Part shown: one piece after another, positions 28,346 through 58,711 of the stretch | Numbering within the stretch: the stretch's first letter is position 1 | Layout of the letters: every line of letters begins with the position of its first letter | Assembly (NCBI RefSeq): GCF_036971445.1 | Contig: NC_091469.1 | Location: 268,522,001-268,586,000 of the forward strand | Reading direction: 5' to 3' | DNA from: Narcine bancroftii | Taxonomy: Eukaryota | Length of the DNA: 64,000 bases | Made by a program: the position numbers and the translations under genes | Notes under the pieces: generated by a model | What the model was told of the DNA's origin: nothing | The model's database searches: none | The model's input: the letters and a program-made list of their open reading frames with translations, nothing else

Positions 28346-28421
28346 ATGGTGGGCACCGGGAAGCCGATGCTGCGCCTCGTCCTGGGGATGGTCGCGCTCC
28401 TCGCTCTGCCCCGACTTTCAG
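28346..28421 (+). CDS. NCR3LG1: B7-H6-like gene, exon 1: signal peptide
   Basis: MVGTGKPMLRLVLGMVALLALPRLS (alternative ATG at 28367), donor CAG|GTAAGA, phase 1, compatible with the V exon. Confidence 0.72.
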
Positions 28422-28791
28422 GTAAGATGCGTGGCGAGAGCCGGCAGACGGACGGCGCTGGAGCGGCCCTGGCCGCGACTTCCAGGCACAATGAAGGCCA
28501 AGTGAATCCACCAGTTAATGGCTTTAACGATTAATCACCGGTTTCATAATTGTATCGAAGTCGTGTGGGTTGTTACTGCGCCCTGAGGCTCTTTGACTGG
28601 AAACTGGTTCCGACGTGGGAGTGGTGATTGGACCCCCCTCCCCCCACCTTCCCCAGAACGTACGCGATACATTGCGAACAATTGCAATTACTCCAGCAGT
28701 AGCAGAAACTGATACAACGAGGTGTTTTGGGGTGGTGGGGGTCCAACCACTACTCCCACGTCGGAACCACGTTTCCAGGTTCCCACAGGTG

Positions 28792-30725
28792 TGTGAGAAA
28801 CAGAAGTACCTTCACAGAATTTGCTTGAGACAAAAATTGAGAACAAAGAACTTTTATTCTACTATTACAACAATGCAAAGTTGGGTGCTTACCCTGGGAA
28901 TACACACAGATACTGAGGCTGACCCAACTTTTATACATTTCATTTCAGTCCAGAGATACCTTCCCCCTAACATTCTTCTGCCTCCTGGATTGGTTTAGCA
29001 TTAGGTAATTCTGCCCACGTGGATTCTAACTTCTTATCAGTTTATGTGCCTTCCTGCAAACTTGTTAGCCAGGAAATATCATGTCTTTGTTCTTGACTCA
29101 TTAATCAATCCTCAAGACTTGCTAAAGCTATTTACTTGCTATCCTGTTTTGAAGATCCTTATTTTATTATACTTTTATAACCCTTCCTCCCATTCCAGCA
29201 TCCCTTCACCCTGATTTAACCCATAATTCTTTTTCTTTGGCTTGGCTTCGCGGACGAAGATTTATGGAGGGGGTAAAAGTCCACGTCAGCTGCAGGCTCG
29301 ATTGTGGCTGACAAGTCCGATGCGGGACAGGCAGACACGGTTGCAGCGGTTGCAGGGGAAAATTGGTGGGTTGGGGTTGGGTGTTGGGTTTTTCCTCCTT
29401 TGTCTTTTGTCAGTGAGGTGGGCTCTGCGGTCTTCTTCAAAGGAGGTTGCTGCCCGCCGAACTGTGAGGCGCCAAGATGCACGGTTGGAGGCGATATCAG
29501 CCCACTGGCGGTGGTCAATGTGGCAGGCACCAAGAGATTTCTTTAGGCAGTCCTTGTACCTCTTCTTTGGTGCACCTCTGTCATGGTGGCCAGTGGAGAG
29601 CTCGCCGTATAATACGATCTTGGGAAGGCGATGGTCCTCCATTCTAGAGACGTGACCCTCCCAGCGCAGCTGGATCTTCAGCAGCGTGGACTCGATGCTG
29701 TCGGCCAATGCCATCTCGAGTACTTCGATGTTAGGGATGAAGGCGCTCCAATGAATGTTGAGGATGGAGCGGAGACAACGCTGGTGGAAGCGTTCTAGGA
29801 GCCGTAGGTGATGCCGGTAGAGGACCCATGATTCGGAGCCGAACAGGAGTGTGGGTATGACAACGGCTCTGTATACGCTTATCTTTGTGAGGTTTTTCAG
29901 TTGGTTGTTTTTCCAGACTCTTTTGGTAGTCTTCCAAAGGCGCTATTTGCCTTGGCGAGTCTGTTGTCTATCTCATTGTCGATCCTTGCATCTGATGAAA
30001 TGGTGCAGCCGAGATAGGTAAACTGGTTGACCGTTTTGAGTTTTGTGTGCCCGATGGAGATGTGGGGGGGCTGGTAGTCATGGTGGGGAGCTGGCTGATG
30101 GAGGACCTCAGTTTTCTTCAGGCTGACTTCCAGGCCAAACATTTTGGCAGTTTCCGCAAAACAGGACGTCAAGCGCTGAAGAGCTGGCTCTGAATGGGCA
30201 ACTAAAGCGGCATCGTCTGCAAAGAGTAGTTCACGGACAAGTTTCTCTTGTGTCTTGGTGTGAGCTTGCAGGCGCCTCAGATTGAAGAGACTGCCATCCG
30301 TGCGGTACCGGATGTAAACAGCGTCTTCATTGTTGAGGTCTTTCATGGCTTGGTTCAGCATCATGCTGAAGAAGATTGTAAAGAGGGTTGGTGCGAGAAC
30401 ACAGCCTTGCTTCACGCCATTGTTAATGGAGAAGGGTTCAGAGAGCTCATTGCTGTATCTGACCCGACCTTGTTGGTTTTCGTGCAGTTGGATAACCATG
30501 TTGAGGAACTTTGGGGGGCATCCGAGGCGCTCTAGTATTTGCCAAAGCCCTTTCCTGCTCACGGTGTTGAAGGCTTTGGTGAGGTCAACAAAGGTGATGT
30601 AGAGTCCTTTGTTTTGTTCTCTGCTGACTCCTCCCATTCCAGCATCCCTTCACCCTGATTTAACCCATAATACTTCATCCTTAATTAGCACTTGCTTGAC
30701 TCCTCACATTCCAGTATCCCTTACA
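28792..30725 (-). mobile_element. Solo LTR, antisense in intron 1, interrupted by an RTE
   Basis: Minus strand TGTAAG...CTCACA, 4-bp TSD GGTG, minus-strand TATA near 28933 and AATAAA near 28855. Confidence 0.7.
29228..30624 (-). mobile_element. RTE LINE, 5'-truncated, young
   Basis: RT ORF 29897-30637 and C-terminal ORF 29286-29714; nearly identical to 24549-26115. Confidence 0.93.
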
Positions 30726-32361
30726 GGTGGAATTACCTGCCTTGCATCGGGCCATGTTTCTCATTTAATTTAATGATGTAATATCTCTTTTCCCGGGCTT
30801 TTTTTGTTTAAAAAGAGACCCTTTTTGATAATTGTGAGACCAAGGGAATTTTTATTTCCAGTGAAATGAAACTTTCCTGGAGTTGTTTCAGCGAGACCAC
30901 AGTGGATCTGTATTTGTATCTTGATTTTTTTTTTTAATTTCCCCTCCCCCGGGATATCGCATCACTGCCAATGTCTGTATCTATTGACATCCTGAATTAC
31001 CTGTAAACTAAGAAGGTGATTTAGAGTTAACCACATGGTGGGGATTTCCTTCCCCCAAGTAACTTTTAATGATTTTTTTTTACAGGATGTTTCTGGTCAC
31101 TATTTACTGAAATCCAGAATATTTTTCAACTCTAGATTTATTTACTTTTTGGATATTCTAAACTGTCAGTTCCAGTTCTGAACTCCTCTACTCCAATTTT
31201 TTTTTGGTTGATAAGCCCCTTTCTCCCCCTCCCCCCCCCCCCCCCATGAGACACTGAAATTTTTCCTGAATGGCCAGACTTTAATTTCTTGCTTCATTCT
31301 TCATGATTTATCCGTACTATTGAATCCTTTTTTTGTTGTTTTAAACCATTTGATTAAATCACCCATCAATTGTAACTTTGTATAAGTTAGCCTTCTAATT
31401 GTTAAAAAATAAACTTAAGTTGATGTGTGTCAATGCTAAAAACTGCACACACATTTCCTCCAGTTTACAAATGAGCAATTTGCAGACACCAATACATATG
31501 AACATACTCCCATAACATAATTAAATTAAAAAAAAAACAACTGTAGAACTAATTTCCTCTCTTTCCATTTTTATAAATTGTTCTTATCAGTTTTTGATGC
31601 CATTCATTATAATACTGTGCAGGTATAGTTACCATATTGAGAAAATTTTCTGACTTGTGGGCATAATTGATTTAAGGACGTTATAAAAACAGAATCTGCT
31701 CATGACATGGGCAATACCCGTGGTGTTCAAAAGAATCCATTGAACTTCACTTCTGTGAAGTGAGCATGTCGCAAAATATTTTGGTACTCTGTTCTATACA
31801 TCCCAAATATATTATTATTCTGGTTTATCATTTAAAATGGAATGAGTATGTCATATGGGTTTTGAACAAGAATTTTGAAATATTTATTTTGTCCATACCA
31901 GACATTGGCAATTTCTCTCTGTTTCAGAAAGGAATGTAGTTTCTCGAAGTCGTCAGTGTCTCCTATCAACCAGCTTTGTGCTCAGGGGTATAGCTGCACT
32001 GCCAAACATTCCACATCTAACTATAACAAAGGTTTGGAAAAAGAAAATGTGTCAGTATGTATGAAAAGAGAAAATGATGAAAAAAAAATCATGGAAAATA
32101 TGAAAATATGGATATAGTTAGTTTACAGTCAAAGAGAATATGTTCGAGCCAGGAAAGGGAGAAACCAAGTTAGCTTGAAGTTGTGGAAGGAGGATGACGA
32201 GAATTACAACAAGAATAAGACGTTGATGAAATAATCTGCTTGATGGATTCATTAGGACAATTGGAGTTCAATAATTCAAACAAGAAAACTTGAGAAAAAG
32301 ATGAAGGGAATTTGAGAAAAACACAAAGAAGTGTAAAAGCTGTGAAATGTAAAGAATAAGG

Positions 32362-33161
32362 CAGGGGTGTCAAACTCAAATTCACAGAGGGCCAAAATTA
32401 AAAACTTGGACTAAGTCGTGGGCCAAACTAAATATTTATTGAAAATTTTCAACAACATCTGCATGTTTTATCTTCTTTCAACATATGTAATGTTAAACTT
32501 TTTCTTATTAAAATAAATGTTTAATAATAGTTTTGGTTAAACTCTTTCCAGAAGAAGCATTAACAAATGAGAAATAAAATATTCAATAAATTATATTTCT
32601 CTATAGCATTTAAGCTCCTTTTAAATGTATTTTTTTTCACAAGCCAACAAGTCAAAAAAATAACTTGCTTCAATGAAAATCCAATCTTTCAACTATGAAC
32701 AGTCGAAAGTTAACCAAAGAAAATATTAATCCAAGCTTAGCTTGCTACACTGTGATTTACTCTGATGCACCTGGGTCTAAACCAAATACTTGGCATCTCT
32801 TCTTAGATGCAAGTTCATCAAACTCTGGGGTCAGAGTTTGCCTCCCACCTGTGTTGAAAGGTCCTGTTTTCTGTCTTTCGTTTGGCCATTTTTCATAAGG
32901 GGTTTATTACATGTGAGTTGGGCGACAGGTCGCAGATGCTAATGAAAGTAAAGAGAGGAGGTGGGGGCGTTTAGCGGCTGATGGGCCGGCGCCAATGCAT
33001 TTGCAAAGCATTCTGGGATTTGTAGTATTAGCTGTGCATGCGCTATACTGGCGCGGCGGCCAGCGGGCCAGCTCTAATACATATTTGATATGATCTTGCG
33101 GGCCAAATATAATTATATCATGGGCCAAATTTGGCCCGCGGGCCTGAGTTTGACATGTGTG
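32362..33161 (-). mobile_element. Internally deleted hAT/Charlie (GTF2IRD2-like transposase) DNA transposon
   Basis: TIR CAGGGGTGTCAAACTCA / TGAGTTTGACATGTGTG, 8-bp TSD GAATAAGG. The minus strand joins the N-terminus MAKRKTENRTFQHRWEA to the C-terminus PEFDELASKKRCQV. Confidence 0.8.
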
Positions 33162-34639: not shown

Positions 34640-34900
34640 CATGGTGGCACATTGGCTGACACAGATTTCTGCCAGTGGACACCCTGGTTCAATTCTGATC
34701 ATCAATGCTATATGATGCTCCCATGCTTCTGCCTGTGTCCATGTGAATATTCCCTGAGTGCTCTGGTTTCCGCCCACATCCCAACGACCAGCAGATTGGT
34801 GGACTAAATGCTGGAATCTGGGGAGGGTGATCCGAATTTGGGAGAGATTAAAAAACAATTAGTGTAAATGAGTACTTGATCATCAGCATGGACTCAGTGA
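34640..34900 (+). mobile_element. tRNA-derived SINE remnant
   Basis: B-box-like ggttcaattc and the core gtgctctggtttccgcccacatccca; a related minus copy lies at about 61190-61445. Confidence 0.45.
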
Positions 34901-35389
34901 CCATGAAGTCACTCGTGTATGTGATTTGGCATAATATGAGTAGGTAAGTTTGCGAGATATGTGGTACTTTAATTGATATCTGAGTGATGGGGTGAGGTTG
35001 AGAGTGAGGGTTGGTGTTGGATTCAGTGAATGAGTTCTTGGGAGAATTGTGAGATAAATGTTGTTAAAATAGATGTACTATATTTGAAGCAAAGGACTTT
35101 ATCTATGAATGGAGTGTCAAATCACTAAAGTAAAATATGGATAACTCCATTCTAATACATCTGATTAGAACGTGGCAAGAAATGAATGAATGTATAAGGA
35201 AAAAAAGTAGGGATATCAATAAAATTGTGTAAAAATGTGCTATTGCCTATGAACATGGGGAATAGAATATTAAATTTGTGGTATGACAAAGGTATAAGAG
35301 TGATTAAGGACTGTTTACATGGAAGGAACTCTTATGTCCTTTGAACAATTAAAACACAAATAAGGAGTGGCCACTTTCTGTTTTCTCCA

Positions 35390-39700: not shown

Positions 39701-39931
39701 TGTTTTTCTTGAATAAAATTGCCGCTCCCCAAGCTTTAGAATTAAATGTAGAAAAAGCTACTTGACTACCCAATCTCTTCAATTTTAAATGGTTGCTTCA
39801 GTTAAATGAATCTATTGTGAAAAGGCAATATCTACCCCTAATTTTGTAATATACCCTAATACCTTCTTTCTTTTTATGTGTCTGTTAATCCCATTAATAT
39901 TAAAAATTAATATCTTAACTGCCTTAGCCAT
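36780..39931 (-). mobile_element. Decayed L1/Tx1 ORF2 (EN through RT)
   Basis: Minus-strand ATG at 39931 (MAKAVKILIFNINGI), SYRPISLLNVDYKI, KIKYLGI. Confidence 0.8.
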
Positions 39932-41596: not shown

Positions 41597-41959
41597 AAGG
41601 TGAACTAATTGTCTCAATGAATTCAAGAACTGTGGAAGCCATTGTAAATAAAGATGTTCTTCTCGACTGCCGAGTGTCTGGTTACACAACCAGTGAAATT
41701 GACGTTACTACCATGGGAGTTCAGTGGTTCTTTGAAAAAAATGGCCCTTCAGGTTTTACTAAAGAAAAAGTGTACGTGTTCCACCAAGGAGAGCATACAC
41801 CATACAGAAACAGAGCTGCAGTATTTGATGATGAGTTGAAAAGGGGAATTGCTTCCCTTTTTCTTCCACATGTGCAATTTAATGAAGAAGGAGATTATAC
41901 ATGTGTTGTTTTTATCAAATCAGACCATGGAAGCGGAAAATCTTCAATGACTGTTTCAG
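41597..41959 (+). CDS. NCR3LG1: B7-H6-like gene, exon 2: IgV domain
   Basis: tttcag| acceptor (tandem CAG-AAG), G|GTGAAG donor, phase 1/1. DVLLDC..TTMGVQWF..ELKRGIASLFLP..EEGDYTCVV parallels the human B7-H6 V domain as recalled (TSMGITWF..RLKSGDASLRLP..EAGEYRC). Confidence 0.9.
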
Positions 41960-42795: not shown

Positions 42796-43116
42796 CCAAA
42801 CCACAAGTTGCCTTATCTTTGACTGCAGTCACAATTGAGAATGGAATGGAAAAATCAGTGAATTGTTACAGTGCACACTTTTATCCCATGCTCATTGAGA
42901 TGAGATGGTTAAAGAAAACAAAGGACAAAGAAGAAGAAATTTTAAATCATGTCTGCACAGGATCCCCAGTTAAAAATAATGATGGAACCTACAATGTTAC
43001 TAGTCATATAAGGTTGCGCCCATCACTCCTTGACAACGATAATACTTATGTATGTTTTGTGAGACATAGATCACTTAGTAGTGATATAAAATTGGCTACC
43101 CATTTGACCGTCAAAG
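42796..43116 (+). CDS. NCR3LG1: B7-H6-like gene, exon 3: IgC1 domain
   Basis: ttttcag| and G|GTAAGA, phase 1/1. C..HFYP..W..TGSPVKNNDGTYNVTS..YVCFVRHRSL, compared with B7-H6 TGPTIKNMDGTFNVTS..YQCVVRHASL. Confidence 0.9.
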
Positions 43117-43209: not shown

Positions 43210-44215
43210 AGACTATAAGTAATGGAAGAGGAGTAGGCCATCTGACCCATCGAGCTTGGTGTGTCTTTCAATAAGATCATGGCTGACCTGCCATGGACTC
43301 CACCTTCCTGTCTATTTCCCATTACCCTTAGTTCTCCTATTTAAATAAAGCTGTCTTAAATATATGTAACAATGCCTCTACGGTTTTCTTGAACAGAGAA
43401 TTCCACACATATGCTACTCTCTGGGAAAAGCAGTTCCTCCTCATCTCCGTCCTAAATCGACTCCCCTGAATTTTGAAACTATGTCCCCGAGTTCTAGATT
43501 CACTTGTCAAAAGGAAACCACTTTATTGCCATTATCTTATCTATCCCTTTTGTAATTATGTTTTATCAGATCCCCTCTCACTCTTCTGAATTCTAGCTAG
43601 TATAGTCCCCAGGTGACTCAATCTCTTCTCATAGGCTGATGCCCTCATCTTGGAATCAACGGGGTGAACCTCCTCTGCACCACCTCCAAAACCAAGTCAG
43701 TTGACCAGAATTGCGCCCTATATAGTTGCAGCAGAACTTCACTGCTCTTCAATTCATTCCTTCGAGCAATGTAGACAAACATTAAATTTCCCTGCTGGAT
43801 CTCCTGTGGCACTTTCAAAACAACCTTTTGCGATTAATGCACAAGCACTCCCAGGTCCCTCTGAACGACAGGATGGTGCAATCTTTCACCTTTTAAATAA
43901 TATTCTGATCTTATTTTCTTCCAAATTGGGTGATCTCACATTCAGCAATATTGCTCTCCATTTGACAGACCCTTTTCCACTCATGAGCAATATTGCTCTC
44001 CATTTGACAGACCCTTTTCCACTCATGAGCAATATTGCTCTCCATTTGACAGACCCTTTTCCACTCATGAGCAATATTGCTCTCCATTTGACAGACCCTT
44101 TTCCTCTCATGAACCTATCTGTATCTGAAGATTCTACATCCTCTGCACAATTACTTTCCCATGCAATTTAATATCACCAGCAAATCCACTACTCTTGGTC
44201 CCTTCTTCAAAGATT
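43210..44215 (-). mobile_element. CR1 3' fragment, decayed
   Basis: Reverse complement resembles the CR1 C-terminus and 3' UTR. Confidence 0.55.
43944..44111. repeat. 42-bp minisatellite x4
   Basis: Unit agcaatattgctctccatttgacagacccttttccactcatg, with one mismatch in copy 4. Confidence 0.95.
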
Positions 44216-46502: not shown

Positions 46503-46619
46503 AGCCAGAAGTTGTTATACCAGGGAATATAATAGCTGGCAGTGTATTTGCTAGTTGGCTGATATGCTCATTGATCATGGTCATTGGATTTTTTCTATAT
46601 TTAAAGTATTTCAGAAAAG
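46503..46619 (+). CDS. NCR3LG1: B7-H6-like gene, exon 4: transmembrane segment
   Basis: Strong acceptor (t-tract, cttacag|), donor AAG|GTGAGA, 117 nt, phase 1/1. IIAGSVFASWLICSLIMVIGFFLYL is followed by KYFRK. Confidence 0.85.
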
Positions 46620-46799: not shown

Positions 46800-48395
46800 G
46801 AACTGGACACTCTCATCTTCACGATGGATGTCCAATCCCTTTATATCTCCATCCCCCATATAGAAAGACTCAAAGCACTCTGCTTCTTTTTGGACTAAAG
46901 ACCCAACCAGCCACCCTCTACCACCATCCTCCTCTGCCTAGCAGAACTTGTCCTCACTTTAAACAACAACTCCTTTAACTCATCTCACATCCTCCAAATC
47001 AAAGGAGTAGCCATGGGTCTCAGCTATGCCTACCTGTTTGTGGAGCAATCCATGCTGCAAGTCTACACGGGCAAGATCCCTCAACTGATCCTCTGGTACA
47101 TCGATGACTACATTGAGGCTGCCTCATGTACTCATGATGAGCTTGTCAACTTCCACCCCAATCTCAAACTCACCTGGTCCATCTCCGAAAGCACTCTTCC
47201 CTTCCTGGGTCTCTCTGTCTCCATCTCAGGAGATAAGCTTTCCACTGACATATTACAAGGGCACCAACTCTCACAACTACCTTGAATACACTTCCTCACA
47301 CCCTGTCCCCTACAAGGTTTCTGTTCCCACCTCTCAATTTTTCCATCTCTGCTGCATTTGTTCCCAAGATGAGGTCTTCTCGTCCAGATCTTTTGAAATG
47401 TCTGACTTCTTCCACAAATGTGGCTTCCCCTCCACCACCATCAAATCTGCCCTCACCCGTTCATCTGCCCTGGCCCCCTCTGCCCCCAGACACAACAAAC
47501 ATAGATCCCCCTTGTCCTCACCTACCACCCCACCAACTTCTGCATCCAACACATAATCCTCTGGAATTTCCGGCACTTACAACAGGATCCCACTACAAGC
47601 CACACCCTCCCCTCTCTTCCTTCTCTAGGGACCGCTCCCTCCATGACTCCCTCGTGCACTCGTCACTACCCACCAATCTCCATCACACCCCCCTCCCCTC
47701 TTCCAGCACCTTCCCATGGCTGCAGGAGGTGCCATACCTCCCCCCCCCTCACCACAGTCCAGGGCCCAAACAGGCTATTCAAGTGAAGCAACACTTCAAT
47801 TGTGTATCCGCAGGACTAATTCACTGCATCCGGTGCTCTCTTTGTGGCCTTCTCTACATCGGAGAGACTGGTCGCAGATTGGGAGATTGCTTCACTGAGC
47901 ACCTTCCCTATGTCTGCACCAGAGCCAACCATTTCATTCTGTGTCACACTCCCATACTCAATGTTTGTCCATGGTCCCACCAAGACCACCTACAAATCGG
48001 AGAGACAACACCTAATTTTCCACCTGGGCACTCTCCAGCCAGATGGCATTAATGTCGACTTTTCTGATTTCTGCTAACCTGCTCTCCTCTTTTCCCTCCC
48101 TCCTTCCCTTCTCCTTTCCATTTCTCCTCCCTCCTTTTGTTTCATCTTGTATTCGATCACTATCATTACACCTTTCACCTAGCTATCCCTCCTCCCCTTG
48201 ATCACTGCTATCCCTTCTTCACCTATCACTTCCTACCTTTGAGACCACACCTCCCCCTTACTCTTGCTTGGATGCCTGCTGACACTTTTCCATACCTTGA
48301 TGAAGGGCTCAAGCCCGAAACGTCAGTTATGTATTTTTTCTTTGCTATACAAAGTACACTGATGTGCTGAGTTTCTCCAGCTTTGTGTGTTTTAA
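46800..48395 (+). mobile_element. Penelope-like element (RT plus GIY-YIG), decayed
   Basis: GVAMG..YAYLFV, WYIDDY, IRCSLCGLLYIGETGRRLGDCFTEHL, and a pLTR-like tail (ttgatgaagggctcaagcccgaaacgtc). Confidence 0.82.
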
Positions 48396-49226: not shown

Positions 49227-51651
49227 GGAAGGAGTCATGTGATGGAGTAGTGGCCGGACGGTGAACTCCAGCCCTCTCCAGAAAAGTCGGGAAAAACAAA
49301 AGAAAACACAAAGGCACAGAAATAAAAGTTACAGAAAAGTGAGTATAAAGGTGGAAAGAAGATGGCGACAAAAAAAGAAAAATCGAAAGCAACGGTAAGA
49401 AGAGAGGAAGAGAAGACAAAGGAGGAAAAAGGTGAAGGCCTTACCTGTCTGAAGAGGCCCGCTGCGGAGAGAGAAACCCGCTCCCTCAGGTCGGTAAATA
49501 ATGGACTACAAAAATGGCTCGCAGAGCCGAGTAAAAGTGCGCAACCGCGCATGCGCGATACTTCGCGCATGCGCGATGCGAATGAAAAAAAACACACCGA
49601 CGGGAGGGGGGACCAGCTGGGGAGTCGATCTCCACAGCCGGCAACGACAGCTGCAGAACACCTGCAGCAAGAAGAGACCACAGAAGACAATAGAAACAAG
49701 AAAGAAGAGGAGGAAAGGGCACCAAAGAAACAACAGATGGTCAACCCAGAGGAAGAAGAAGAGGAAGAGGAAGAGTACAGGGAAATAGAAGAAGAAAAGA
49801 AAGGCAAGGTAAAGGATATACTTGCTCTTATTAAAGGATACATGGAGTCATTTAAAGAATGGCAAACACAGGAATTTAAGGATTTAAGAAAAAGAATAAA
49901 CAACACAGAAGAGAAAATAAATAAAATGGAGATGACCTTAACAGAAATGGGAAAGAAAATGGACAAGATGGAAGAGCGGGCAGTAGCAGCAGAAATGGAG
50001 GTAGAAGACTTAAAAAAGAAATTGGAGAAATCTAATAAAAAAACTAAAGAGACACAAGAACTACTAGCTCAAAAAATAGATACAATGGAAAACCATAACA
50101 GAAGAAATAACATAAAGATAGTGGGCCTTAAGGAAGATGAAGGCAAGAATATGAGGGAGTTTATAAAAGAGTGGATCCCTAAGACCCTAGGATGTCCAGA
50201 ACTACAGCAAGAAATGGAAATAGAAAGGGCACATAGAGTATTGGCCTCTAAACCACAACCACAACAAAAACCAAGATCTATTGTAGTAAAATTCCTAAGA
50301 TATACTACAAGAGAAAAGGTACTGGAGAAGACAATGGAAAAAGTAAGAGAGGGCAACAAACCACTGGAGTATAAAGGGCAAAAAATCTTCATTTATCCAG
50401 ATATAAGTTTTGAACTCCTAAAGAAGAGAAAAGAGTTCAATACAGCAAAGGTGATTTTATGGAAGAAAGGGTATAAATTTATACTAAAGCATCCAGCGGA
50501 TTTGAAAATATTTATTCCAGGACAACAAAACAGACTATTCTCGGATCCAGAAGAAGCACGAAAATTTGCAGAACAATTACAAAAATAGACTGAGGGAGGA
50601 AGACGGGTAATGAGAGTTAAAATGATCACGATTGATATGTATGTGGGTAAAGACAAAAATAGACTGAGGGATGAAGACGGGTAACGAGAGTAAAAATGAT
50701 CACGATTGATATGTATGCGGGTAAAGAGGTATAAGAGTGAATAGAGACAATGAGCATACATGAATGTATCTGTACTTAGAGGAAAATATAGATAGTATAG
50801 ACAAGAATTAATAAGGGAAGGTAATGGAATAGAGAGAATAAGGAGGGAATTAAAAGAGTGACCTTTGTGACATATGAAAAGTGAAATCTTTTCTGGGGGA
50901 GGCGGGGAGGGGGGAAATAGCGGTCACTGCAAAATCAGTTGACGCTTGCGAGTGGATTCGCAAATCCAAATGGAGAGGGGAGATGTGGTTGTCCGACAAG
51001 GGATAAAGGACAACTCAGGAGGTGAAGGGGAGATTGGGGATAAATAAGATAGAAATAGGAGAATAAGGAAAATGTTGGATGTTGTAGGAATGTTGTCTTA
51101 TAAAGAGTTGAAAATAAGAAAACAGAAATGGAAAAGGAGGAAAGGTAATGAGGGAAAAACGGAAAGAGAAGATAAACAAAATATAAAAGGGCTACGCTGA
51201 ACTATATGTCTTTAAATATTAATGGAATACATAACCAAATTAAAAGGAAGAAACTACTAAATTTAAATGAATAAATGTATTCCATTAGAAAAAATAACAT
51301 ATAGGTTAAAAAATAATATTGAAATATTTGAACAAGTATAGGAGCCTTACATTAAATACAATAGCGAAAACCTACTGGGGACAAACATTACCTAAGTTGA
51401 TGGAAGGAGAAGGAAAGAAAAGAATGGACTCAGTAGAATTTCTGGTGTAATTTTGTTGAATGACAACATTGTCTGACTGGCTTAATGCAACCTAGATTGT
51501 ATACCTAAAATGGATGAGAGGGGGGGGTGGGGGGGTGGTTTGGGAGGAAAGGGGGGGGGGAGAAAAAGTCACTGTATATGTGTGAAAAAGAAATAGTGTA
51601 TATCATGGCTAATGTGATTTATGGTGTGAAAAATAAAAAATTTAAAAAAAA
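49227..51651 (+). mobile_element. Young L1 derivative with intact ORF1 and nearly all of ORF2 deleted
   Basis: Perfect 20-bp TSD aggtagctatgtctatgcac (49207-49226, 51652-51671), poly(A), complete 5' end. Confidence 0.92.
49362..50588 (+). CDS. L1 ORF1p (coiled coil plus RRM/CTD, Transposase_22-like), 408 aa, uninterrupted
   Basis: ENHNRRNNIKIVGLKE, EIERAHR, PRSIVVKFLRY, IFIYPDIS..KKRKEF. Confidence 0.9.
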   Translation: MATKKEKSKATVRREEEKTKEEKGEGLTCLKRPAAERETRSLRSVNNGLQKWLAEPSKSAQPRMRDTSRMRDANEKKHTDGRGDQLGSRSPQPATTAAEHLQQEETTEDNRNKKEEEERAPKKQQMVNPEEEEEEEEEYREIEEEKKGKVKDILALIKGYMESFKEWQTQEFKDLRKRINNTEEKINKMEMTLTEMGKKMDKMEERAVAAEMEVEDLKKKLEKSNKKTKETQELLAQKIDTMENHNRRNNIKIVGLKEDEGKNMREFIKEWIPKTLGCPELQQEMEIERAHRVLASKPQPQQKPRSIVVKFLRYTTREKVLEKTMEKVREGNKPLEYKGQKIFIYPDISFELLKKRKEFNTAKVILWKKGYKFILKHPADLKIFIPGQQNRLFSDPEEARKFAEQLQK

Positions 51652-52766
51652 AGGTAGCTATGTCTATGCACAATGATTATTTTCCAAGAAATGCTACTAC
51701 CCAGAGAATAAGAATAGCCAATGCTACATTTGATTGGGGCTAATATACCTATGGGAAATTCAGTGCACAAGTCTGAAATTTAATTTGATAAAATCTCCAA
51801 GATGAGTCTAAGCAACTGCTTAAGGCATTAGGTTTAATCCTGTGGTACTCAACCTTTTATTTTCCACTCACATACCACCTTAAGTATGTCATGCACTCTG
51901 TGGTGAGTGAGGGATTACTTAAGGTTGCATGCGAATGGAAATAAAAGGCTGAGAACCACTGATTTAATCTTTTTTGTGTGAAGCATGATTTTTTTTTCAA
52001 ATACACAATTTGTTACAATGCTTACTTTTGCTTTAGAATACCAAAATATTTCAGAAATTATTGTGAATGATTTGTAGGAACCTGTTTCCCAAATTTCCCC
52101 CAATGGCTTGCTTTCAGAGACTGAGCCCTTTGTAAATATGTAAATACTCATGTGTTAAAAGTGCGTTGAGTCAAGTGCTGAAGGATGTGCAAATTTTTTT
52201 CATGTATGTTGGTTTCACATGATGTTGCTTGAGTGAATATTTTCCCATCTCTTGATCTCACTGATGTCTTTATGCTGATTGGGCTTGATCCATTGAACAT
52301 TACCTGTTTTCATACAATGGGTTTATCTCTGTGTTGCTACCTCTCCCCTTTGGGATAAAGTGGCTTGGCACTTTGCCTGCTCTTTTCATCTAATAGTACA
52401 CTGGTATTTCTCCATTTTTCCATGATTTCTTGTTTTGTCTAACATAATTTTTCATACCTCTTGTGACTTCTGCAGTTCCTGTCCTACTCTCCTTGCAACC
52501 TGATGTTTCTTACTTTGCATTGGCTCAATTTTTGTTTCTGATCTACTGTATTTGTGGGTCTCTGTCTCTCATTTTTAAGCTTGGAAATGCCAATCATTTA
52601 GAGTAGGCTCATTTCCTTCATGAGAAATGGCTTTTTATTTCATGAAACACTGAGCTCTGTACTGTCATTTTCTTATTTGTTCCCTTTGATGTTAATTCTG
52701 ATATTTTTGAAATAACAAATCTTTCTTCTATGGAAGGAATAACTTTTATTTTTTATTTTTTTCTAG

Positions 52767-53183
52767 TGCCTCCAAAAGTTTCTGATATCAGCAGTCCTCC
52801 ACATATTATACATTTGGAAAATTGTACACTGAGTTGTCAGATATCAGGATATAAACCTCAAAGCATTTACTTACATTGGTTTCTACAAAGAAAGGGGAGA
52901 AGTAAAGAAATGATTTACCGATGGACTTCAAATGCGAACTTGTGCACATCTGTGGAAAATGAACAACATGCACTTATTTCAGAAGACCTCTCTTTCAATG
53001 AATCTTTTGTATTTAGCATGTCAGTTGTCAAACAGATTAGTGATGGGAGTGCCAGTGTGAACTGCAAAGTTAAATTTTGCCCTGATATCGATAAAGATAA
53101 TGAAGCCATTCTCTCGCTTTCTGTTTACCATAGCACTGTGAAAGGCAAGATTAGTAAGTCCATCAAACTTAGAGTTGAAGGAA
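52767..53183 (+). CDS. NCR3LG1: B7-H6-like gene, exon 5: post-TM C1-like Ig domain
   Basis: t-tract ttctag| acceptor, A|GTAAGT donor, phase 1/1, open for 417 nt. VPPKVSDI..TLSCQISGYKPQSIYLHW..SDGSASV..LSVYHS; the F-strand Cys is replaced. Confidence 0.82.
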
Positions 53184-53224
53184 GTAAGTATAAACTATAA
53201 ATAATTCTTTAAAAGTGACTTTTA

Positions 53225-55062
53225 AAAAAATATATTTTATTTATTTTTTTTTTTCCCCATAAAAATACATAACAAATTCTCATATATATTTAAAATAAAG
53301 CAACCCTCACATTATAGATGCACATGCACAATCAGGGCTCACATTTATGTTGACCATAAAAATTCTATATGGGGAAATCACTTGCATTTATACTGTAGCA
53401 GCATCCATTATTGTCCTTTTTATTATAGTAGCTATAAATATAATTGGGCCCCTGTATGATCCAAACATGGCTGCCATATCTTGATAAATATGTCCTATTT
53501 ATTCTTTGTTATATATATTTTTTCCTATAGGTATTTAACTATTCATCTCGGCAGCCCATCATGCTACCTGTAGAGGGGAGTCAGATTTTTCCAAGTAATC
53601 ACAATACATTTCTTAGCCACTGCTAAGGCTATTTTAACAAATGAAATTTGAAATTTTGTTAGTTTTTTGCTTATTTCTATGAAGTTACCCAAAAGATAAA
53701 GCTCCAGGTTGCCCATGAAGGCCACCCCTGTTATTCTTGTTAATATTTCAGCAGTATCCTGCCAGAAAGGTCTCACCTTCACATGTAGCATGTAAGAATG
53801 TTCCTATTTCTGTCCTAAACCTAAAACTCATCTCCGATATTTCCGGTTTTGATTTATGCAACTTCAGTGGTGTGAGATATAATTGGTGTAGGAAATTTTA
53901 TTGTACTAGTCCATTTCTTGCATTTATAATTGATGTCATGCTGTCCAAACACCAATCAGACCAACATCTTCCATTATTGCAACACCTAGATCTGACTCCC
54001 ATCTCTCTCTTGATCTCTGTAAACTTGGTTTCATACTTTCAATTTTCAGCACTTTGTTATTCCATAGTAATAAAGCATATTCCATGGAGCAATAGTGCAT
54101 ATTAGGTATAAATTTAGATGTATTTCCTAGCCAAATTGTTTTGTCTATTTCATTAATTTCAGATGGGGCCAAATTGGCCCCCATCTTGCTCTTAGGAACA
54201 ATCTTAGCTGGAGAAAACAAAATAGTCCTATTGGCTACTCCATATTTAGTTCTTAATTGTTCAAAAGACATAAGAGATTCCTCCACATAACAATCATCAA
54301 TATATCTTATTCCTTTAATCATACTGTGAATTCAATATTTTGTTCCCTAGATTCATAGGAAGCTACACATTTTTACATAATGGGGTTCTTAATGATATAC
54401 CTGCGTTTTTTTCCCCAATACACTCATTTATTTCTTGTCCTATTCTAATCATAAGTTTTAATATAGGGCTATCCATCTTTTTTCTTATTAATTTAACATT
54501 CCACTTGTAAATGAAGTCCTTCACTGTCTCCTCTTTTATTGAATTCAGTCACATTCAGATCCAAGAAGGGGGACTGTCTTCTTCAAAGAAGAATGATAAA
54601 AAACCTTGGCTTGTGCTGATATATAGTATTTCTTAAAATCCAGAAGCCTAATTCTTCCCAGTTTATAGTCCTATGTTAGCTTTTCCAATGAAATTGCCAA
54701 CAGTTTGTTAAACATTGGTAGTACAGTGATTACAAACAATTAAGAAAACAAATACGTGGAGATATCTGTGACATCATTTGTCCATAGTAATTTTCTAATT
54801 TGTGTAATGGGGATCATTTCATTTTTCAACTTTCTGAAACCATTCTTAAAAAAAAAAGATCTCTGACAATTATTCAGTTCTTTCAGAAATGAAAGTCATT
54901 TTGGGGGAGGCATGGCCATGTGAAGGTCTTAGATAGACATGTTTTGATTGATATGTCATAATTATGTAATAGTTTAAATAAATTTGTTGGTACTGCAATA
55001 GGCAACAATTGAAAAAGATACTGTAATCTTGGCATCACCTTCATTTTAATACAATTTACCTT
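53225..55062 (-). mobile_element. L1 ORF2 3' fragment
   Basis: KVNCIKMKVMPRLQYLFQ, IALAVAKKCIVITWK, poly(T) at the left end. Confidence 0.78.
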
Positions 55063-55367
55063 TTTCATATTGTTTTGTCCATTTATTTTTGTGAAAAAAT
55101 TCTTAATTTTAAGATTTTAACCGTCTTACTGATACTCTTCATGGAGACCTCGATCAAAACATGTCTATCTAAGACCTTCACGTGGTTCTGAAAGAACATA
55201 ACTGAATAATTGTCAGTTTTTTTTGAAGAATGGTTTCAGAAAGTTGAAAAATGAAATGATCCCCCATTACACAAATTGGAAAATTACTATGGACAAATGA
55301 TGTCACAAATATCTCCACATATTTGTTTTCTTAATTGTTTGTAATCACTGTACTACCAGTGTTTAAC
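54707..55367. repeat. Inverted duplication (arms 54707-54951 and 55150-55367)
   Basis: The arms are reverse-complementary over about 215 bp with few substitutions and small indels. Confidence 0.9.
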
Positions 55368-55499
55368 TTCAATCTTGTATTAAGATTTGTGTTAAAGGGA
55401 AGTGAGCATCCCCCCAATTTAGAGAACCGGTTGCAGAATAGATAAGGGAAATCCAGTGAATGTGATATGTTTGGGCCTTGAGAGCTTTCAATAAATCAT

Positions 55500-55880
55500 T
55501 GGTTTTCAAATAACAACCCCCCACCCAACCAAACACATTCCACCTGAAACAATCCCTATGCCATCAGTGCTCTGATTAGTAAGGGTTACTTCAGGTGGTA
55601 TGTGAGTGGGGGTGGGGGGGGGGAGGTGGAGAACCACTGCTCCAGACCCAATAGTTACTGAAATATTTTGCTTGAGAAAAATTGTCATTGGCCCATTTCT
55701 TTTGGAGTTATGAAACCCTGCACATAACGAATCAATTAGGTACGATTAAAACAGTGGTTTTCACCCTTTTACTGAAATATCAACTTAAACAACCTGTTAG
55801 TAATCACAGAGCACTTGTGGCAAAAAGATTGCTTAAGATGGAATGCAAGTTTAGGGGGGGCAGTTTGAAAACCACTACAC
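55500..55880. mobile_element. hAT MITE (family of 16198-17600)
   Basis: Shared core gagaaccactgctc..ttgagaaaaattgtcattggccc. Confidence 0.75.
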
Positions 55881-57224
55881 TAAGTGCTACACGTGAGGTT
55901 ATAAAACCAAAATTTGAACACATGGGGTTGGGGGAAATATTTGAAGATAAATTGAGGATTAAGTTAACAGATGGAAAAATAATACTGCATGTCATTTTTG
56001 GACTGAGAGGCACTGACAAAGTAGGTTAAATGGTTCCTTTTGCTGTCACATAATACTACATTAAAAAGGTAATATGCATGATATGCTTCAACATTTGTCT
56101 GCTCTAAGTAGTCTTCTAGAACAATACCTGGCAGCCTTAACAGTAGGAGAAAGAGAAGCAAAAGAGCGTCCCTTTCGAGTCACTGACCAAGGATTTACGT
56201 CCAGCGCTCCTGCAGCCTCTGCGGTCATCAGCAATCTGATCTCCAGATCCAAACCTCTGGGACAATCAGGAAGACTTCAGCGTCTGAGGTCTCTACGCAA
56301 GCCTGTCTTGCTCTCAGTACCCTCTCAGATCCCAGTTCAAATACCCTGTCCCCACGAGCCAGTCTCCAGCAACCCACAGCTTGGTGTGAGCCCTTGGACT
56401 GCAAGTCGCCAGCAGCCCGCAGCCAGACTGGGTTCTTAAGCAGCTAAGCCATTTGCTTGTCTGCTGTCGTGGCCACTGTCTTTTACGTAATCTCCCATGC
56501 CTGTACATCCTGCTTGGCGCCCTGCGCCGATTCATTGTTCTCCTCGAGTCTGCTACCTATTGTGGTATGCTTCCCAACATGGGTGCTGCTGCCATCTTGG
56601 CATTGACTTCTGGTCGCAGGATTTAAAAATAAAACATTACTGGACCCTTTAACAGGCTGTTTAAAGCCTGCAGGGAGCTATCAGACCTGTGCTGTATATC
56701 CGCTCTCCACTCCCCTGGATCCACACCAGTGGCAGCCCTGCTAAAGAGGGTGCCGCAAGGACCAGTGTTAGGCATCAGCTGTTCACAATTTCTATCAATG
56801 ATTTGAATGATAGCTCATGAATCAAAGCTGGATGGTGAAAAAGATACCAAGATACTGTACATCCAGTAGACAGGCCCAGGGATCACCATCTTGGGAGGTG
56901 GGCCAGTATACACAAAAATAAGAATAACTATCTTGTTCCTGAGGGTGTATTTTGGGAGCTCTCTATCACAGTGGACTATGCAGGCTCAATATGTTCAAGA
57001 GAAAGAATAACTAGAGGGAACTGAAGAAGGCAACAAATGGAATTACATTAGAGTACATTGTGATCAGACTACATTTGTAGACAAGCGTGTAGCATTGCTA
57101 ACTGTAGGTGAGTATTCGATTATACTCAGCTGCTGTTTATTCCAGTTATTCCAAGAAGTAACATGAGCTTTTTTTTATGTTTGTAAAAAGAAATAATTTG
57201 CAGTTTCATTTTCTTTCATGCAGA

Positions 57225-57700
57225 ATATAACCATATAACTGTTTACGGCGTGGAAACAGGCCATGTCGGCCCTTTAAGTCCACGCCGGTTCACTTGAACA
57301 ACTCCACTAGCTTCCCCCTCCTGCTCTCCGCCCATAACCCTCCAACCCCTCACATCCATGTACACAACCAACCTTCTCTTAAATGACAGAAGGGACCCTG
57401 CTGCAACTATCTCTTTTGGAAGATCATTCCATTCTGCCACCACTCTCTGAGTGAAAAAGGATCCTTTAATATTTCACGTAAAGTTTTGCCCCTTTACCCT
57501 TAACTTATGCCCTCTTGTTCCAACCTCCCCTGCCCTCAGGGGAAAGAGTCTATTTACATCTACTCTATCTATTCCCTTCATAATTTTAAATACCTCTATC
57601 AAATACCCTCTCAGTCATCTACATTCCAATGAATAAAGTCCTTGTCTCCTTAATCTTTCTCCGTAATCTGGATGCTGTAAGCCAGGCAACATCCTTAGTA
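57225..57700 (-). mobile_element. CR1 3' end
   Basis: Reverse complement matches 19780-20230. Confidence 0.78.
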
Positions 57701-58333
57701 TGAGTTTTTCAATTTTTTCACCCTTTTATTTGCAATGTTGAAAGAGGAAGCTGATTGTGTATACTTCAACCAAGAGCCAGAGAGATCATGATGGTGTTTT
57801 GTTTGATTGAGTAACTTGCTGAATATATAAGCATTCTTATTGTGTGCTCCAGTTTGTACAAGTTTTCATGAGATATAATGAAACAGGTATAATATTGAAC
57901 AAGGGTTTTCTACAAGTTGGTAAGTGCTAACTTCATGGACTTCTGGCCATGTACAATGTTTTAGTGCGGGATATCTTTGGAATTGTTAAGATCTTCACTC
58001 TTGTTAATCTCTTTGATGATTTATTTTTGTTTGCATTTGTCCCTTCACCTTACAACCGTAAAAGCTGAAAATGGGAATACTTTTTTTTCCCTTTTGACCT
58101 GTTTCTTTGTGTCAGTATGTCCTTTTACATTTAGTCTTTCTGGTAGTTGTATCTGACAAATGAGCCTGGAATACCCCGCAGTAAATTTTAACAGAGGGGC
58201 AGCTTCTGTTAAAATGTCTAAACTGCACATTATACTCTATCTTTAATAGATAAAGTGAAATGAGGGATTTGTCAGTTGTGCTCAGCGAATTCTGAAAGCA
58301 TCATCCTTTTCTTTTTATTTAAAAAAAATCCAG

Positions 58334-58711
58334 TTGCACCAAAGATGACAAAGGTTCTAGCACCACGTTGGATTATTCATGAAGAAGAGATTGCTTTGAC
58401 CTGCCCAATTGATGGATTTAAACCAAGACCACTGGCTATCACTTGGTACCAAAGAGAGAACAACATATTGAGAAAAGTTGTAAAACATGAGCTAGACACT
58501 CAATATTCGATTGATCAAGATGGAACAAATCGGACCAAATATGTCCACGAGCTAAATGAGCTGGAAAACATAGATCATACTTACAGTGTCACTAGTGTTC
58601 TAATTTTTACACCAACCATTCTTGAAGACCATGACACAATATACATTTGTGAAGTTGAACATCCAGCCACGGCTTCAAAAGCACAAAAAGAAGTGCTGCT
58701 AAATCTAAAAG
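58334..58711 (+). CDS. NCR3LG1: B7-H6-like gene, exon 6: second post-TM IgC1 domain; the gene continues beyond the window
   Basis: tccag| acceptor, AAG|GTACAG donor, phase 1/1, 378 nt. APKMTKV..LTCPIDGFKPRPLAITWY..DHTYSVTSVLIFTP..YICEVEHPA. Confidence 0.85.

What the first reader, a model, noticed from the sequence alone, without database searches (positions are those of the whole stretch)
28346..58711. B7-H6-like receptor with tandem C1-type Ig domains on the cytoplasmic side of its transmembrane segment
Seen: six exons, all joined by phase-1 GT-AG introns, splice into one open frame SP - IgV - IgC1 - TM(+KYFRK) - IgC1 - IgC1, with no stop yet. Known: B7-family proteins are type I, with V+C ectodomains and short or non-Ig tails (the human B7-H6 tail is Gag-related). 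C1-set domains are normally luminal or extracellular (MHC, Ig, TCR, tapasin, SIRP). Inference: a signal peptide, a single TM and positive-inside residues place a chain of C1 domains in the cytosol. That would make this an NKp30-ligand-like protein with an intracellular Ig scaffold. Similar architectures may already be annotated in amphibians or reptiles; I cannot verify novelty.
Basis: partly seen in the sequence, partly recalled or inferred. Interest (0 to 1): 0.88.

Follow-up and report, generated by a model that had tools for sequence, protein, structure and literature searches.

The report
B7-H6-like gene with intracellular Ig array
This electric-ray gene encodes a B7-H6-like immune surface ligand whose part behind the membrane anchor is a chain of antibody-type (C1-set) Ig domains, apparently inside the cell; the design is old and widespread in fishes and amphibians, sits unnamed in databases, and I found no paper describing it.

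Summary
All six exons have AG/GT borders and phase 1. Together they give 557 codons without a stop. Residues 33-557 are identical to a RefSeq protein of Narcine bancroftii (P0177, 941 aa, "uncharacterized"). P0177 continues with four more C1 domains encoded beyond the window. Four RNA runs show the join 53183>58334. I could not read the TM-to-C1 join (46619>52767) directly. It rests on the RefSeq model and on RNA contig lengths.

The ectodomain matches human B7-H6 (TM-score 0.88, 32% identity). Several lines place the array in the cytosol:
- Four of the six array domains lack the disulfide pair, in the same pattern from chimaera to frogs.
- Glycosylation sequons are enriched only outside the cell.
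- An acidic dileucine sorting motif is conserved in a disordered loop of the first array domain.
- Bichir and reedfish TRIM ligases carry closely related C1 domains.

One caveat is new. RefSeq isoforms in two sharks, a frog and a caecilian skip the TM exon precisely, so a secreted all-Ig form probably also exists.

The scan reported the same architecture earlier on the tandem paralogue 31.7 kb beyond the window's end (s1-877790). A nurse-shark relative is deposited as "B7H6". No paper I could read describes the array.

The parts
28346..28421 (+). Exon 1: start codon and signal peptide (MVGTGKPMLRLVLGMVALLALPRLS), phase-1 GT donor. This exon is missing from the RefSeq model.
   Evidence: Read. 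It is 56% identical to the N-terminus of the sawfish orthologue P0002, which continues ...RLSEEGDLIV like E1+E2 here.
41597..41959 (+). Exon 2: IgV domain of the ectodomain
   Evidence: Pfam V-set 1.1e-10. PDB sequence hits: CD276 and B7-H6. 100% identical to P0177 residues 1-114.
42796..43116 (+). Exon 3: extracellular IgC1 domain with the canonical Cys-Trp-Cys-His pattern
   Evidence: Pfam C1-set 1.2e-11. The best PDB sequence hit is the human B7-H6 C domain, 2.2e-13. 100% identical to P0177 residues 116-221.
46503..46619 (+). Exon 4: stalk, transmembrane helix (46526-46603) and stop-transfer KYFRK (46604-46618). It is a symmetric 117-nt phase-1 cassette.
   Evidence: Read. Hydropathy 2.4. 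AF2 predicts a helix at residues 238-257 of P0177. 100% identical to P0177 residues 223-260. The homologous exon is skipped in isoforms of relatives.
52767..53183 (+). Exon 5: first post-TM Ig domain (d1). It is C1-derived, the F-strand Cys is replaced by Leu, and it carries a disordered insertion of about 20 residues.
   Evidence: Pfam C1-set 0.0024, below the cut-off. The family HMM aligns it end to end at 5e-25. AF2 pLDDT is 80-90 outside residues 318-337. RNA contigs cover it in 4 runs.
52961..52978 (+). EQHALI: an acidic dileucine-type motif [DE]xxxL[LI] in the disordered d1 loop
   Evidence: Present at the same aligned position in 15 of 24 family sequences, including 10 of the 11 group-A sequences (Heptranchias excepted), the nurse-shark B7H6 and a coelacanth member. 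Coordinates.
58334..58711 (+). Exon 6: second post-TM Ig domain (d2), a canonical C1-set domain with both Cys. The gene continues beyond the window with d3-d6.
   Evidence: Pfam C1-set 1.3e-11. The join 53183>58334 is seen in 4 RNA runs, and the loose end after 58711 continues into the next exon, which is not in the window. 100% identical to P0177 residues 401-525.

Best explanation
The finding is the 5' two thirds of a real, expressed gene of the lesser electric ray (RefSeq P0177). The gene is one of three old paralogue groups of the cartilaginous-fish B7H6 family. 

Shown: the main mRNA encodes a signal peptide, a B7-H6-like IgV-IgC1 ectodomain, one transmembrane helix with KYFRK behind it, and then, with no linker, six C1-set-derived Ig domains that run to the C-terminus. 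Two of these (d1, d2) are in the window and four lie beyond it. 

Inferred: the V-C1 part is displayed on the cell surface as a ligand for NKp30-type receptors, and the six-domain rod sits in the cytosol. There it does not depend on disulfides. Its membrane-proximal domain exposes an adaptor-type dileucine sorting signal. The rest serves as a protein-binding scaffold, playing the part that the B30.2 domain plays in butyrophilins and TRIM ligases. 

Precise skipping of the 117-nt TM exon is annotated in relatives. It would give a second, secreted product in which all eight Ig domains are luminal or extracellular.
For: Gene structure:
- The exon model is identical to P0177 over 525 residues.
- The E5-E6 join appears in four RNA runs, in contigs that extend 119 or 146 nt upstream of E5 (E4 is 117 nt) and 1.6-2.3 kb downstream of E6.

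Family:
- 119 representatives score below 1e-10, and 86 of 150 have ecto-TM-C1 array.
- Members occur in chimaera, sharks, rays, coelacanth, lungfish, bichir, sturgeon, frogs and a caecilian.
- Three single ORFs with this layout are transcript-derived by my reading of the source records: the nurse-shark entry named B7H6 (P0193), the elephant-shark entry V9K7L7 (P0157) and an ORF from a 3.5-kb Logan contig (P0176).
- Domains d1-d6 each best match the same-numbered domain in other lineages. They are about as conserved as the ectodomain, 40-50% identity to the elephant-shark orthologue.

Ectodomain:
- Foldseek against human B7-H6 gives TM-score 0.85-0.88, rmsd 2.5 A and 31-32% identity.

Cytosolic side:
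- Both disulfide Cys are present in 47% of 828 post-TM domains against 88% of 195 ecto C1 domains. The fixed pattern is d1 C-W-L, d2 C-W-C, d3 C-W-C, d4 C-W-V, d5 C-W-F, d6 V-W-C.
- N-x-S/T sequons have observed/expected 1.57 in front of the TM and 1.12 behind it.
- The [DE]xxxL[LI] motif is conserved in the low-pLDDT d1 loop.
- Seven RING/B-box/coiled-coil TRIM models in Polypterus and Erpetoichthys end in three C1-set domains. In P0207 these are 63% identical to post-TM residues 485-821 of the Polypterus B7-like P0209.
- AF2 folds all eight Ig domains at pLDDT 85-93.
Against: - The topology is predicted, not measured.
- I did not read the letters of the E4>E5 join in this gene.
- d2 and d3 keep both cysteines in all 24 aligned sequences. 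This would fit an oxidising compartment, although the TRIM-borne C1 domains keep them too.
- TM-less isoforms with an intact signal peptide are annotated in white shark, basking shark, a caecilian and a frog, so the array may also, or mainly, work outside the cell.
- The sequon and cysteine statistics pool related proteins and are not independent samples.
- The TRIM-C1 proteins belong to a divergent subfamily and are gene models only.
- The scaffold and sorting roles are analogy, not evidence.
Confidence: 0.7

Rival explanations
1. The C1 array is really an extracellular or secreted module. The functional product would be the TM-less splice form (SP-V-C1-C1x6), a soluble poly-Ig protein. The TM-containing mRNA would be a minor or regulatory form.
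For: Precise TM-exon skipping is annotated in two sharks that are orthologues of this gene (P0185, P0186), in a caecilian (P0171) and in a frog NCR3LG1 (P0009). The exon is a symmetric phase-1 cassette. d2 and d3 keep invariant Cys pairs. C1-set domains are otherwise known only from luminal or extracellular proteins (general knowledge).
Against: - 86 of 150 representatives carry the TM and only 7 have a signal peptide without a TM.
- The only model on record for this gene includes E4.
- The RNA contigs show no branch at the 5' edge of E5 and end 2 or 29 nt beyond the length of E4.
- Four of six domains have lacked a disulfide since before the split of cartilaginous and bony fishes.
- Sequons behind the TM are at chance level.
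- A cytosolic-type sorting motif is conserved.
- Related C1 domains occur in TRIM ligases.
Confidence: 0.17
2. There are two neighbouring genes: a short B7-H6-like V-C1-TM gene, and a separate C1-chain gene with its own leader. They are fused only in silico, because all IgSF exons are phase 1.
For: Phase compatibility alone proves nothing. I did not see the letters of the E4>E5 join. The RNA contigs stop 119-146 nt upstream of E5, a length that could also fit a leader exon with its 5' UTR.
Against: - Single ORFs with V-C1-TM-C1 array exist in sequences I take to be transcript-derived (P0193, P0157, P0176) and in more than 80 gene-model clusters from sharks to frogs.
- TM and d1 are always joined by the same K-x-F/L-x-K-VPPKVS junction.
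- The TM-skipped isoforms join E3-type exons directly to VPPKVS, so d1 is spliced to upstream exons of the same gene.
- 119 nt equals E4 plus the 2 nt (AG) shared by the ends of E2 and E3.
Confidence: 0.05
3. The post-TM Ig chain is a decaying, functionless remnant, an exonised duplication on its way to loss.
For: E5 falls below the Pfam C1-set threshold. Several array domains have lost the disulfide. Apart from one distant turtle protein (P0032), no amniote appeared among the relatives I looked up, and human B7-H6 has a different tail (general knowledge).
Against: - The frame is open over all six array domains in the two dozen species looked up.
- Domain-by-domain orthology holds across more than 400 million years.
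- Identity equals that of the ectodomain.
- W, P and H columns are invariant.
- AF2 folds every array domain confidently.
- The array exons are expressed and spliced.
Confidence: 0.03

Closest known systems
Human B7-H6 (NCR3LG1), ligand of NKp30
   Same: Both are type I membrane proteins with a signal peptide, an IgV domain and an IgC1 domain. The predicted ectodomain superposes on B7-H6 crystal structures (3pv6, 4zso, 6yjp) with TM-score 0.85-0.88 and 31-32% identity. The C domain's best PDB sequence hit is B7-H6.
   Different: By general knowledge, the human tail is non-Ig: Gag-related, with ITIM-, SH2- and SH3-binding motifs. Here the tail is six C1-set-derived Ig domains. NKp30 binding was not tested.
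Nurse-shark 'B7H6' database entry (P0193, 1092 aa; by my recollection deposited with Flajnik et al. 2012, Immunogenetics 64:571)
   Same: It has the same layout, SP-V-C1-TM-C1 array (seven domains). Its d1-d6 are positionally orthologous to those of this gene, with the same cysteine pattern and a dileucine motif in d1.
   Different: It is a different paralogue group: about 35% overall identity and 37% in the V domain. I could not read the paper, so I do not know whether the tail was ever described.
Butyrophilins (V-C-TM-B30.2) and TRIM ligases sharing B30.2
   Same: Both are B7-related ectodomains coupled through one TM to a folded cytosolic beta-sandwich module. That same module is also found at the C-terminus of TRIM E3 ligases (TRIM-C1 models in Polypteridae). 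This is a resemblance in how it works.
   Different: The cytosolic module here is an Ig C1 array, not PRY-SPRY/B30.2. No ligand or inside-out signalling is known. This gene is not a member of the butyrophilin family.
Integrin beta-4 (cytoplasmic FN3 repeats) and titin or obscurin (cytosolic I-set Ig)
   Same: They are precedents for 'extracellular-type' beta-sandwich repeats working in the cytosol, usually without disulfides. The best whole-chain Foldseek hit is the titin fragment I65-I70.
   Different: Those domains are FN3 or I-set. A cytosolic C1-set domain, the type typical of Ig, TCR and MHC, is to my knowledge undescribed.

Membership tests
B7 family, B7-H6 (NCR3LG1) branch | Signal peptide plus IgV plus IgC ectodomain, whose closest solved relative is B7-H6 | tested here: met
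   Pfam V-set and C1-set hits. phmmer of E3 against PDB gives B7-H6 at 2.2e-13, with the next hit at 7e-10. Foldseek gives TM-score 0.88 and 32% identity. For the V domain alone, CD276 scores higher than B7-H6.
B7 family, B7-H6 (NCR3LG1) branch | Single-pass type I membrane topology | tested here: met
   Tested by sequence only. There is an N-terminal h-region. There is one hydrophobic 26-mer with EPE in front and KYFRK behind. AF2 predicts a helix at residues 238-257. No experiment was done.
B7 family, B7-H6 (NCR3LG1) branch | Binds NKp30 (NCR3) | not testable with these tools
B7 family, B7-H6 (NCR3LG1) branch | Orthology or synteny with NCR3LG1 | not tested
Ig C1-set domain (PF07654) | Pfam score above the gathering threshold | tested here: met
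   E3 scores 45.2 bits and E6 45.1 bits against a 21-bit cut-off. Whole P0177 scores 1.2e-57 with six matched stretches. E5 alone scores 18.6 bits and fails the cut-off, but it aligns over positions 2-108 of the 109-position family HMM at 5e-25.
Ig C1-set domain (PF07654) | Canonical B-strand Cys, C-strand Trp and F-strand Cys (Y-x-C-x-V-x-H) | tested here: inconclusive
   Met in E3, d2 (E6) and d3. Not met in d1 (E5, C-W-L-H), d4, d5 and d6. So these are C1-derived domains, four of which have given up the disulfide.
Butyrophilin family | Cytoplasmic B30.2 (PRY-SPRY) domain | tested here: not met
   P0177 has no SPRY or PRY hit at E up to 0.01. This is a resemblance in layout only.

The most novel reading that the evidence does not exclude
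The C1-set Ig domain, the signature of Ig, TCR and MHC, has had a second career inside the cell since before cartilaginous and bony fishes split. In this reading, a fixed six-domain, largely disulfide-free C1 rod is the ancestral cytoplasmic tail of the B7H6 family, and polypterid TRIM ubiquitin ligases carry a related C1 module. That mirrors the B30.2 module shared by butyrophilins and TRIMs. The rod would then be an intracellular recognition or sorting module that links events in the cytosol to display of an NK-cell ligand (inside-out signalling). A splice switch at the TM exon would send the same chain out of the cell instead.
Probability: 0.3. Interest if true: 0.85.

Novelty: new variant of a known kind. 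Interest (0 to 1): 0.68.

Why it matters
B7-H6/NKp30 is a stress-ligand/NK-receptor pair of medical interest, and its evolution has been studied mainly through the ectodomain. If the ancestral B7H6 tail is a folded six-domain Ig rod in the cytosol, three things follow.
- C1-set domains are not restricted to the secretory pathway. That bears on ideas about the origin of Ig, TCR and MHC constant domains.
- The B7/butyrophilin theme "surface Ig ligand coupled to an intracellular sensor module" gains a second module besides B30.2.
- The TM-cassette switch gives a testable case of one Ig chain that folds in either compartment.

The work is directly testable with tagged constructs from sequences already in RefSeq.

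Tried and rejected
- Direct read of the E4>E5 join: not possible. The intron is 6,147 nt and the read laying limit on this genome is 6,000 letters.
- Logan ORFs of this gene: none found.
I therefore could not fetch the exons beyond the window, the RNA contig behind P0176, or the synteny.
- Papers: Flajnik et al. 2012 (PMC3709836) and Ohta & Flajnik 2015 (PMC4594805) are not held. Seven full-text searches found no description of cytoplasmic C1 arrays or of TRIM-C1 proteins.
- Known cytosolic domains at the C-terminal ends of long family members: none found, only Ig families plus a few evident model fusions.
- Homodimer test of d2-d4 with complex prediction: no verdict, score 0.00. This is no evidence either way.
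- Second TM or leader exon in the introns: a hydropathy scan gives only the chance-level AT-rich open stretches expected in introns. The only GT..AG joint inside intron 5 stands in one run with 20 letters on its shorter side.
- Searches with the spliced model: left out. All searches used single exons by reference or database proteins. One local script joined the exons only to count codons and stops and to compare with P0177. The joined string was not printed, saved or sent anywhere.

Full report
**1. Observation**

I read the six exon blocks directly. A script re-checked them.

| Exon | Window coordinates | Length (nt) | Content |
|---|---|---|---|
| E1 | 28346-28421 | 76 | start codon, signal peptide |
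| E2 | 41597-41959 | 363 | IgV |
| E3 | 42796-43116 | 321 | extracellular IgC1 |
| E4 | 46503-46619 | 117 | stalk, TM, KYFRK |
| E5 | 52767-53183 | 417 | first post-TM Ig domain (d1) |
| E6 | 58334-58711 | 378 | second post-TM Ig domain (d2) |

- Every internal exon has an AG acceptor and a GT donor, and all are phase 1.
- The six exons give 557 codons without a stop.
- Pfam calls E2 V-set (1.1e-10), E3 C1-set (1.2e-11) and E6 C1-set (1.3e-11).
- E5 gets only a sub-threshold C1-set hit (0.0024, 18.6 bits against a 21-bit cut-off).
- E4 encodes a 26-residue hydrophobic segment with EPE in front and KYFRK behind.

Phase-1 compatibility alone would not prove anything, because nearly all IgSF exons are phase 1. 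The rest of the work therefore asked whether these exons form one mRNA.

**2. It is an annotated, expressed gene**

A whole-library HMMER search with E6 found 119 representatives below 1e-10. Most are 600-2,000 aa long with many C1 repeats, and E6 often aligns near residue 430-560.

A word-indexed search with the sawfish relative P0002 returned P0177, a 941-aa RefSeq "uncharacterized protein" of Narcine bancroftii.
- It is 100% identical to E2 (from the Met in ..SMNSRT..), E3, E4, E5 and E6, in that order.
- It then continues for 416 residues, which are four more Ig domains.
- P0177 lacks E1. However, E1 matches the N-terminus of the sawfish orthologue (56% identity, and the same ...RLSE-EG.. 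junction).

Four public runs, guessed to be RNA and confirmed as RNA by the spliced contigs, were laid on 52740-58735.
- Each has one long contig (2.5-3.2 kb) with the join 53183>58334 (GT..AG).
- Each contig continues 1.6-2.3 kb past E6.
- The letters after 58711 (CAATCCCAAAATATG...) translate to the next residues of P0177 (..AIPKYDEIK..) and are not in the window. The remaining exons lie beyond the window's end, which agrees with note s1-877806.

Upstream, the contigs carry 117 letters (X1, X2) or 144 letters (X3, X4) before position 52765.
- That is 119 or 146 nt before E5, and E4 is 117 nt.
- The 2 extra nt (AG) are the letters that the ends of E2 and E3 share.
- This is what a de Bruijn contig would do if it broke at the 5' edge of E4.
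- It is consistent with E4>E5, but it is not a reading of the join.

The 6,147-nt intron exceeds the 6,000-letter limit, so I did not see the E4>E5 letters. I estimate that this join is real in this gene at about 0.85.

**3. The family**

Cluster look-ups give members in these species:
- Cartilaginous fishes: elephant shark, horn, whale, bamboo, white and basking sharks, sawfish, stingray, manta and skates.
- Bony fishes: coelacanth, lungfish, reedfish/bichir and sturgeon.
- Amphibians: frogs (including Xenopus laevis and Bombina) and a caecilian.
- A distant relative occurs in a sea turtle.

Nearly all are "uncharacterized". There are two exceptions. A nurse-shark entry is named "Natural killer cell cytotoxicity receptor 3 ligand (B7H6)" (P0193, 1092 aa). 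A Bombina model is named NCR3LG1.

Architecture across the 150 representatives:
- 86 have ectodomain-TM-C1 array.
- 2 have a classical C-terminal TM.
- 7 have a signal peptide and no TM.

Three single ORFs with the full layout are, by my reading of the source records, transcript-derived: P0193, elephant-shark V9K7L7 (P0157) and an ORF from a 3.5-kb Logan contig (P0176). This argues against an annotation fusion.

Three cartilaginous-fish paralogue groups exist:
- Group A holds this gene, sawfish P0002 and elephant-shark LOC103174894.
- Group B holds nurse-shark B7H6 and elephant-shark LOC103174895.
- Group C holds P0013, P0204 and P0201.

Each of d1-d6 of this gene best matches the same-numbered domain in groups A, B and C and in coelacanth, reedfish (P0012), sturgeon, lungfish and frog. 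The six-domain array therefore predates the split of cartilaginous and bony vertebrates. The array is about as conserved as the ectodomain. Against the elephant-shark orthologue the identities are V 49%, C1 42%, TM 40% and d1-d6 40-50%.

**4. What the ectodomain is**

AlphaFold2 on P0177, with a 24-sequence alignment, gives mean pLDDT 84.8.
- All eight Ig domains score 85-93.
- A helix is predicted at residues 238-257.
- Low confidence is confined to 224-240, 318-337 (an insertion in d1) and 463-465.

Foldseek places the V-C1 part on human B7-H6 (3pv6, 4zso, 6yjp) with TM-score 0.85-0.88, rmsd 2.5 A and 31-32% identity. The E3 sequence's best PDB hit is B7-H6 at 2.2e-13. "B7-H6-like" is justified. 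NKp30 binding is an inference.

**5. On which side of the membrane is the array?**

The topology rules (cleavable leader, one TM, positive residues behind it) put it in the cytosol. I found four further lines of evidence.

(a) Disulfides. With a family HMM I extracted 1,323 C1 domains.
- Both canonical cysteines are present in 88% of 195 ecto C1 domains, but in only 47% of 828 post-TM domains.
- The pattern is fixed by position from chimaera to frog and caecilian: d1 C-W-L/V, d2 C-W-C, d3 C-W-C, d4 C-W-V/M, d5 C-W-F, d6 V/I-W-C.

(b) Glycosylation. Over 124 proteins, N-x-S/T sequons have observed/expected 1.57 in front of the TM and 1.12 behind it.

(c) Sorting motif. The disordered d1 insertion carries [DE]xxxL[LI] at the same aligned position in 15 of 24 sequences.
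- Here it reads EQHALI, at window 52961-52978.
- It is present in 10 of the 11 group-A sequences. Heptranchias is the exception, where the acid sits one residue further away.
- It is also present in the nurse-shark B7H6, an elephant-shark paralogue and a coelacanth member.
- By general knowledge, this motif class binds AP adaptor complexes and only works on cytosolic tails.

(d) TRIM ligases. Seven gene models in Polypterus senegalus and Erpetoichthys calabaricus have RING, B-box and TRIM coiled-coil followed by C1-set domains, with no signal peptide or TM.
- The models come from NCBI, plus one held only as a UniRef entry.
- Several lie on contigs other than the one holding the B7-like cluster.
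- The three C1 domains of P0207 are 63% identical to residues 485-821 of the Polypterus B7-like P0209, whose TM is at 233.
- TRIM ligases are cytosolic, so this type of C1 domain is used inside cells.
- These TRIM-borne domains keep both cysteines. The Cys pairs of d2 and d3 are therefore no argument against the cytosol.

Limits: the statistics in (a) and (b) pool related proteins, and the TRIM-C1 proteins are models from a divergent subfamily.

**6. A complication: the TM exon is a cassette**

RefSeq isoforms lack exactly the TM exon in four lineages.
- White shark and basking shark (orthologues of this gene)...QLTV|KVPPKVS....
- The caecilian Microcaecilia.
- The frog Bombina.

All keep the signal peptide. 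These products would be secreted with all Ig domains in the lumen. In this ray, the only model on record includes E4, and the RNA contigs show no branch at the 5' edge of E5. I therefore take the anchored form as the main one here.

The secreted form is a real rival for where the array acts. It is also of interest in itself: one chain, two compartments.

**7. Mechanism**

Shown:
- the gene structure;
- expression of the array exons;
- the B7-H6-like fold of the ectodomain (predicted);
- conservation of the array;
- the pattern of cysteine loss.

Inferred:
- The V-C1 part is a surface ligand for NKp30-type receptors.
- The rod of six Ig domains starts five residues behind the membrane (KYFRK-VPPKV, a junction conserved across the family).
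- The rod lies in the cytosol, exposes a dileucine sorting signal in d1, and acts as a binding scaffold.

The closest analogy in how it works is butyrophilin/TRIM with their shared B30.2 module. It is not a butyrophilin, because P0177 has no B30.2 hit. A self-association test of d2-d4 gave no verdict.

**8. Novelty**

- The sequences are public, in RefSeq and in a nurse-shark entry named B7H6.
- This scan already reported the same architecture for the tandem paralogue 31.7 kb beyond the window's end (s1-877790). This is therefore not a first sighting.
- I could not read the paper behind the nurse-shark entry.
- Seven full-text searches found no description of cytoplasmic C1 arrays or of TRIM-C1 ligases.

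I rate it a new variant of a known kind: a B7-family ligand with an unusual folded tail. The rating should fall if the 2012 paper describes the tail.

- the position-specific cysteine pattern;
- the sequon contrast;
- the conserved dileucine motif;
- the TRIM-C1 link;
- the TM-cassette isoforms.

**9. Procedure notes**

- No search used the joined exon model.
- The window has no N runs.
- Nothing needed referral.

Noticed in passing
window 28346-28421: The RefSeq model of this gene (P0177) starts at an internal Met of the V exon and lacks the leader exon.
   Followed up: partly
not in the window: proteins P0207, P0213, P0216, P0218, P0226, P0227, P0229 (Polypterus senegalus, Erpetoichthys calabaricus): These are TRIM-type E3 ligase models (RING, B-box, TRIM coiled-coil) that carry C1-set Ig domains; in P0207, three C1 domains take the place of a B30.2 domain and are 63% identical to the post-TM array of a B7-like protein of the same species. 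I found no paper on them.
   Followed up: partly
not in the window: P0185, P0186 (white and basking shark), P0171 (caecilian), P0009 (Bombina NCR3LG1 isoform X2): These are annotated isoforms that skip exactly the TM exon while keeping the signal peptide. They predict a secreted all-Ig form of the family.
   Followed up: yes
window 58712-58821: Reading through the E6 donor gives GTVRIYLFHIVSCFTVVLTGIFRFYSKLTQKEFKKI and a stop, which looks like a TM with a basic tail. The RNA contigs splice at 58711 instead, and I saw no support for the read-through. It is probably chance in AT-rich intron sequence.
   Followed up: partly
window 55540-55939 and 57140-57739: Two stretches in intron 5 reach word depths of 10^3 to 10^5 in all four RNA runs, with many loose ends. 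They are probably highly transcribed interspersed repeats and not part of the gene.
   Followed up: no
window 29897-30637 (-), 47013-48052 (+), 49362-50588 (+): Transposon remains lie in the introns. There is a reverse-transcriptase fragment (Pfam RVT_1, 1.5e-23). There is an ORF at 47282-48052 with a ...LLYIGETGRRL... motif that by memory recalls GIY-YIG (Penelope-like) elements, without a Pfam hit. There is also an intact 408-aa, Glu/Lys-rich ORF without any Pfam hit.
   Followed up: partly
window 43886-44110: A tandem repeat with a period of about 42 nt lies in intron 3. It reads NIALHLTDPFPLMS four times in one frame.
   Followed up: no
window 53885-56147: A GT..AG joint appears in a single run (X2, one contig, only 20 letters on the shorter side). 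It could be a minor cryptic exon junction or a repeat artefact.
   Followed up: no
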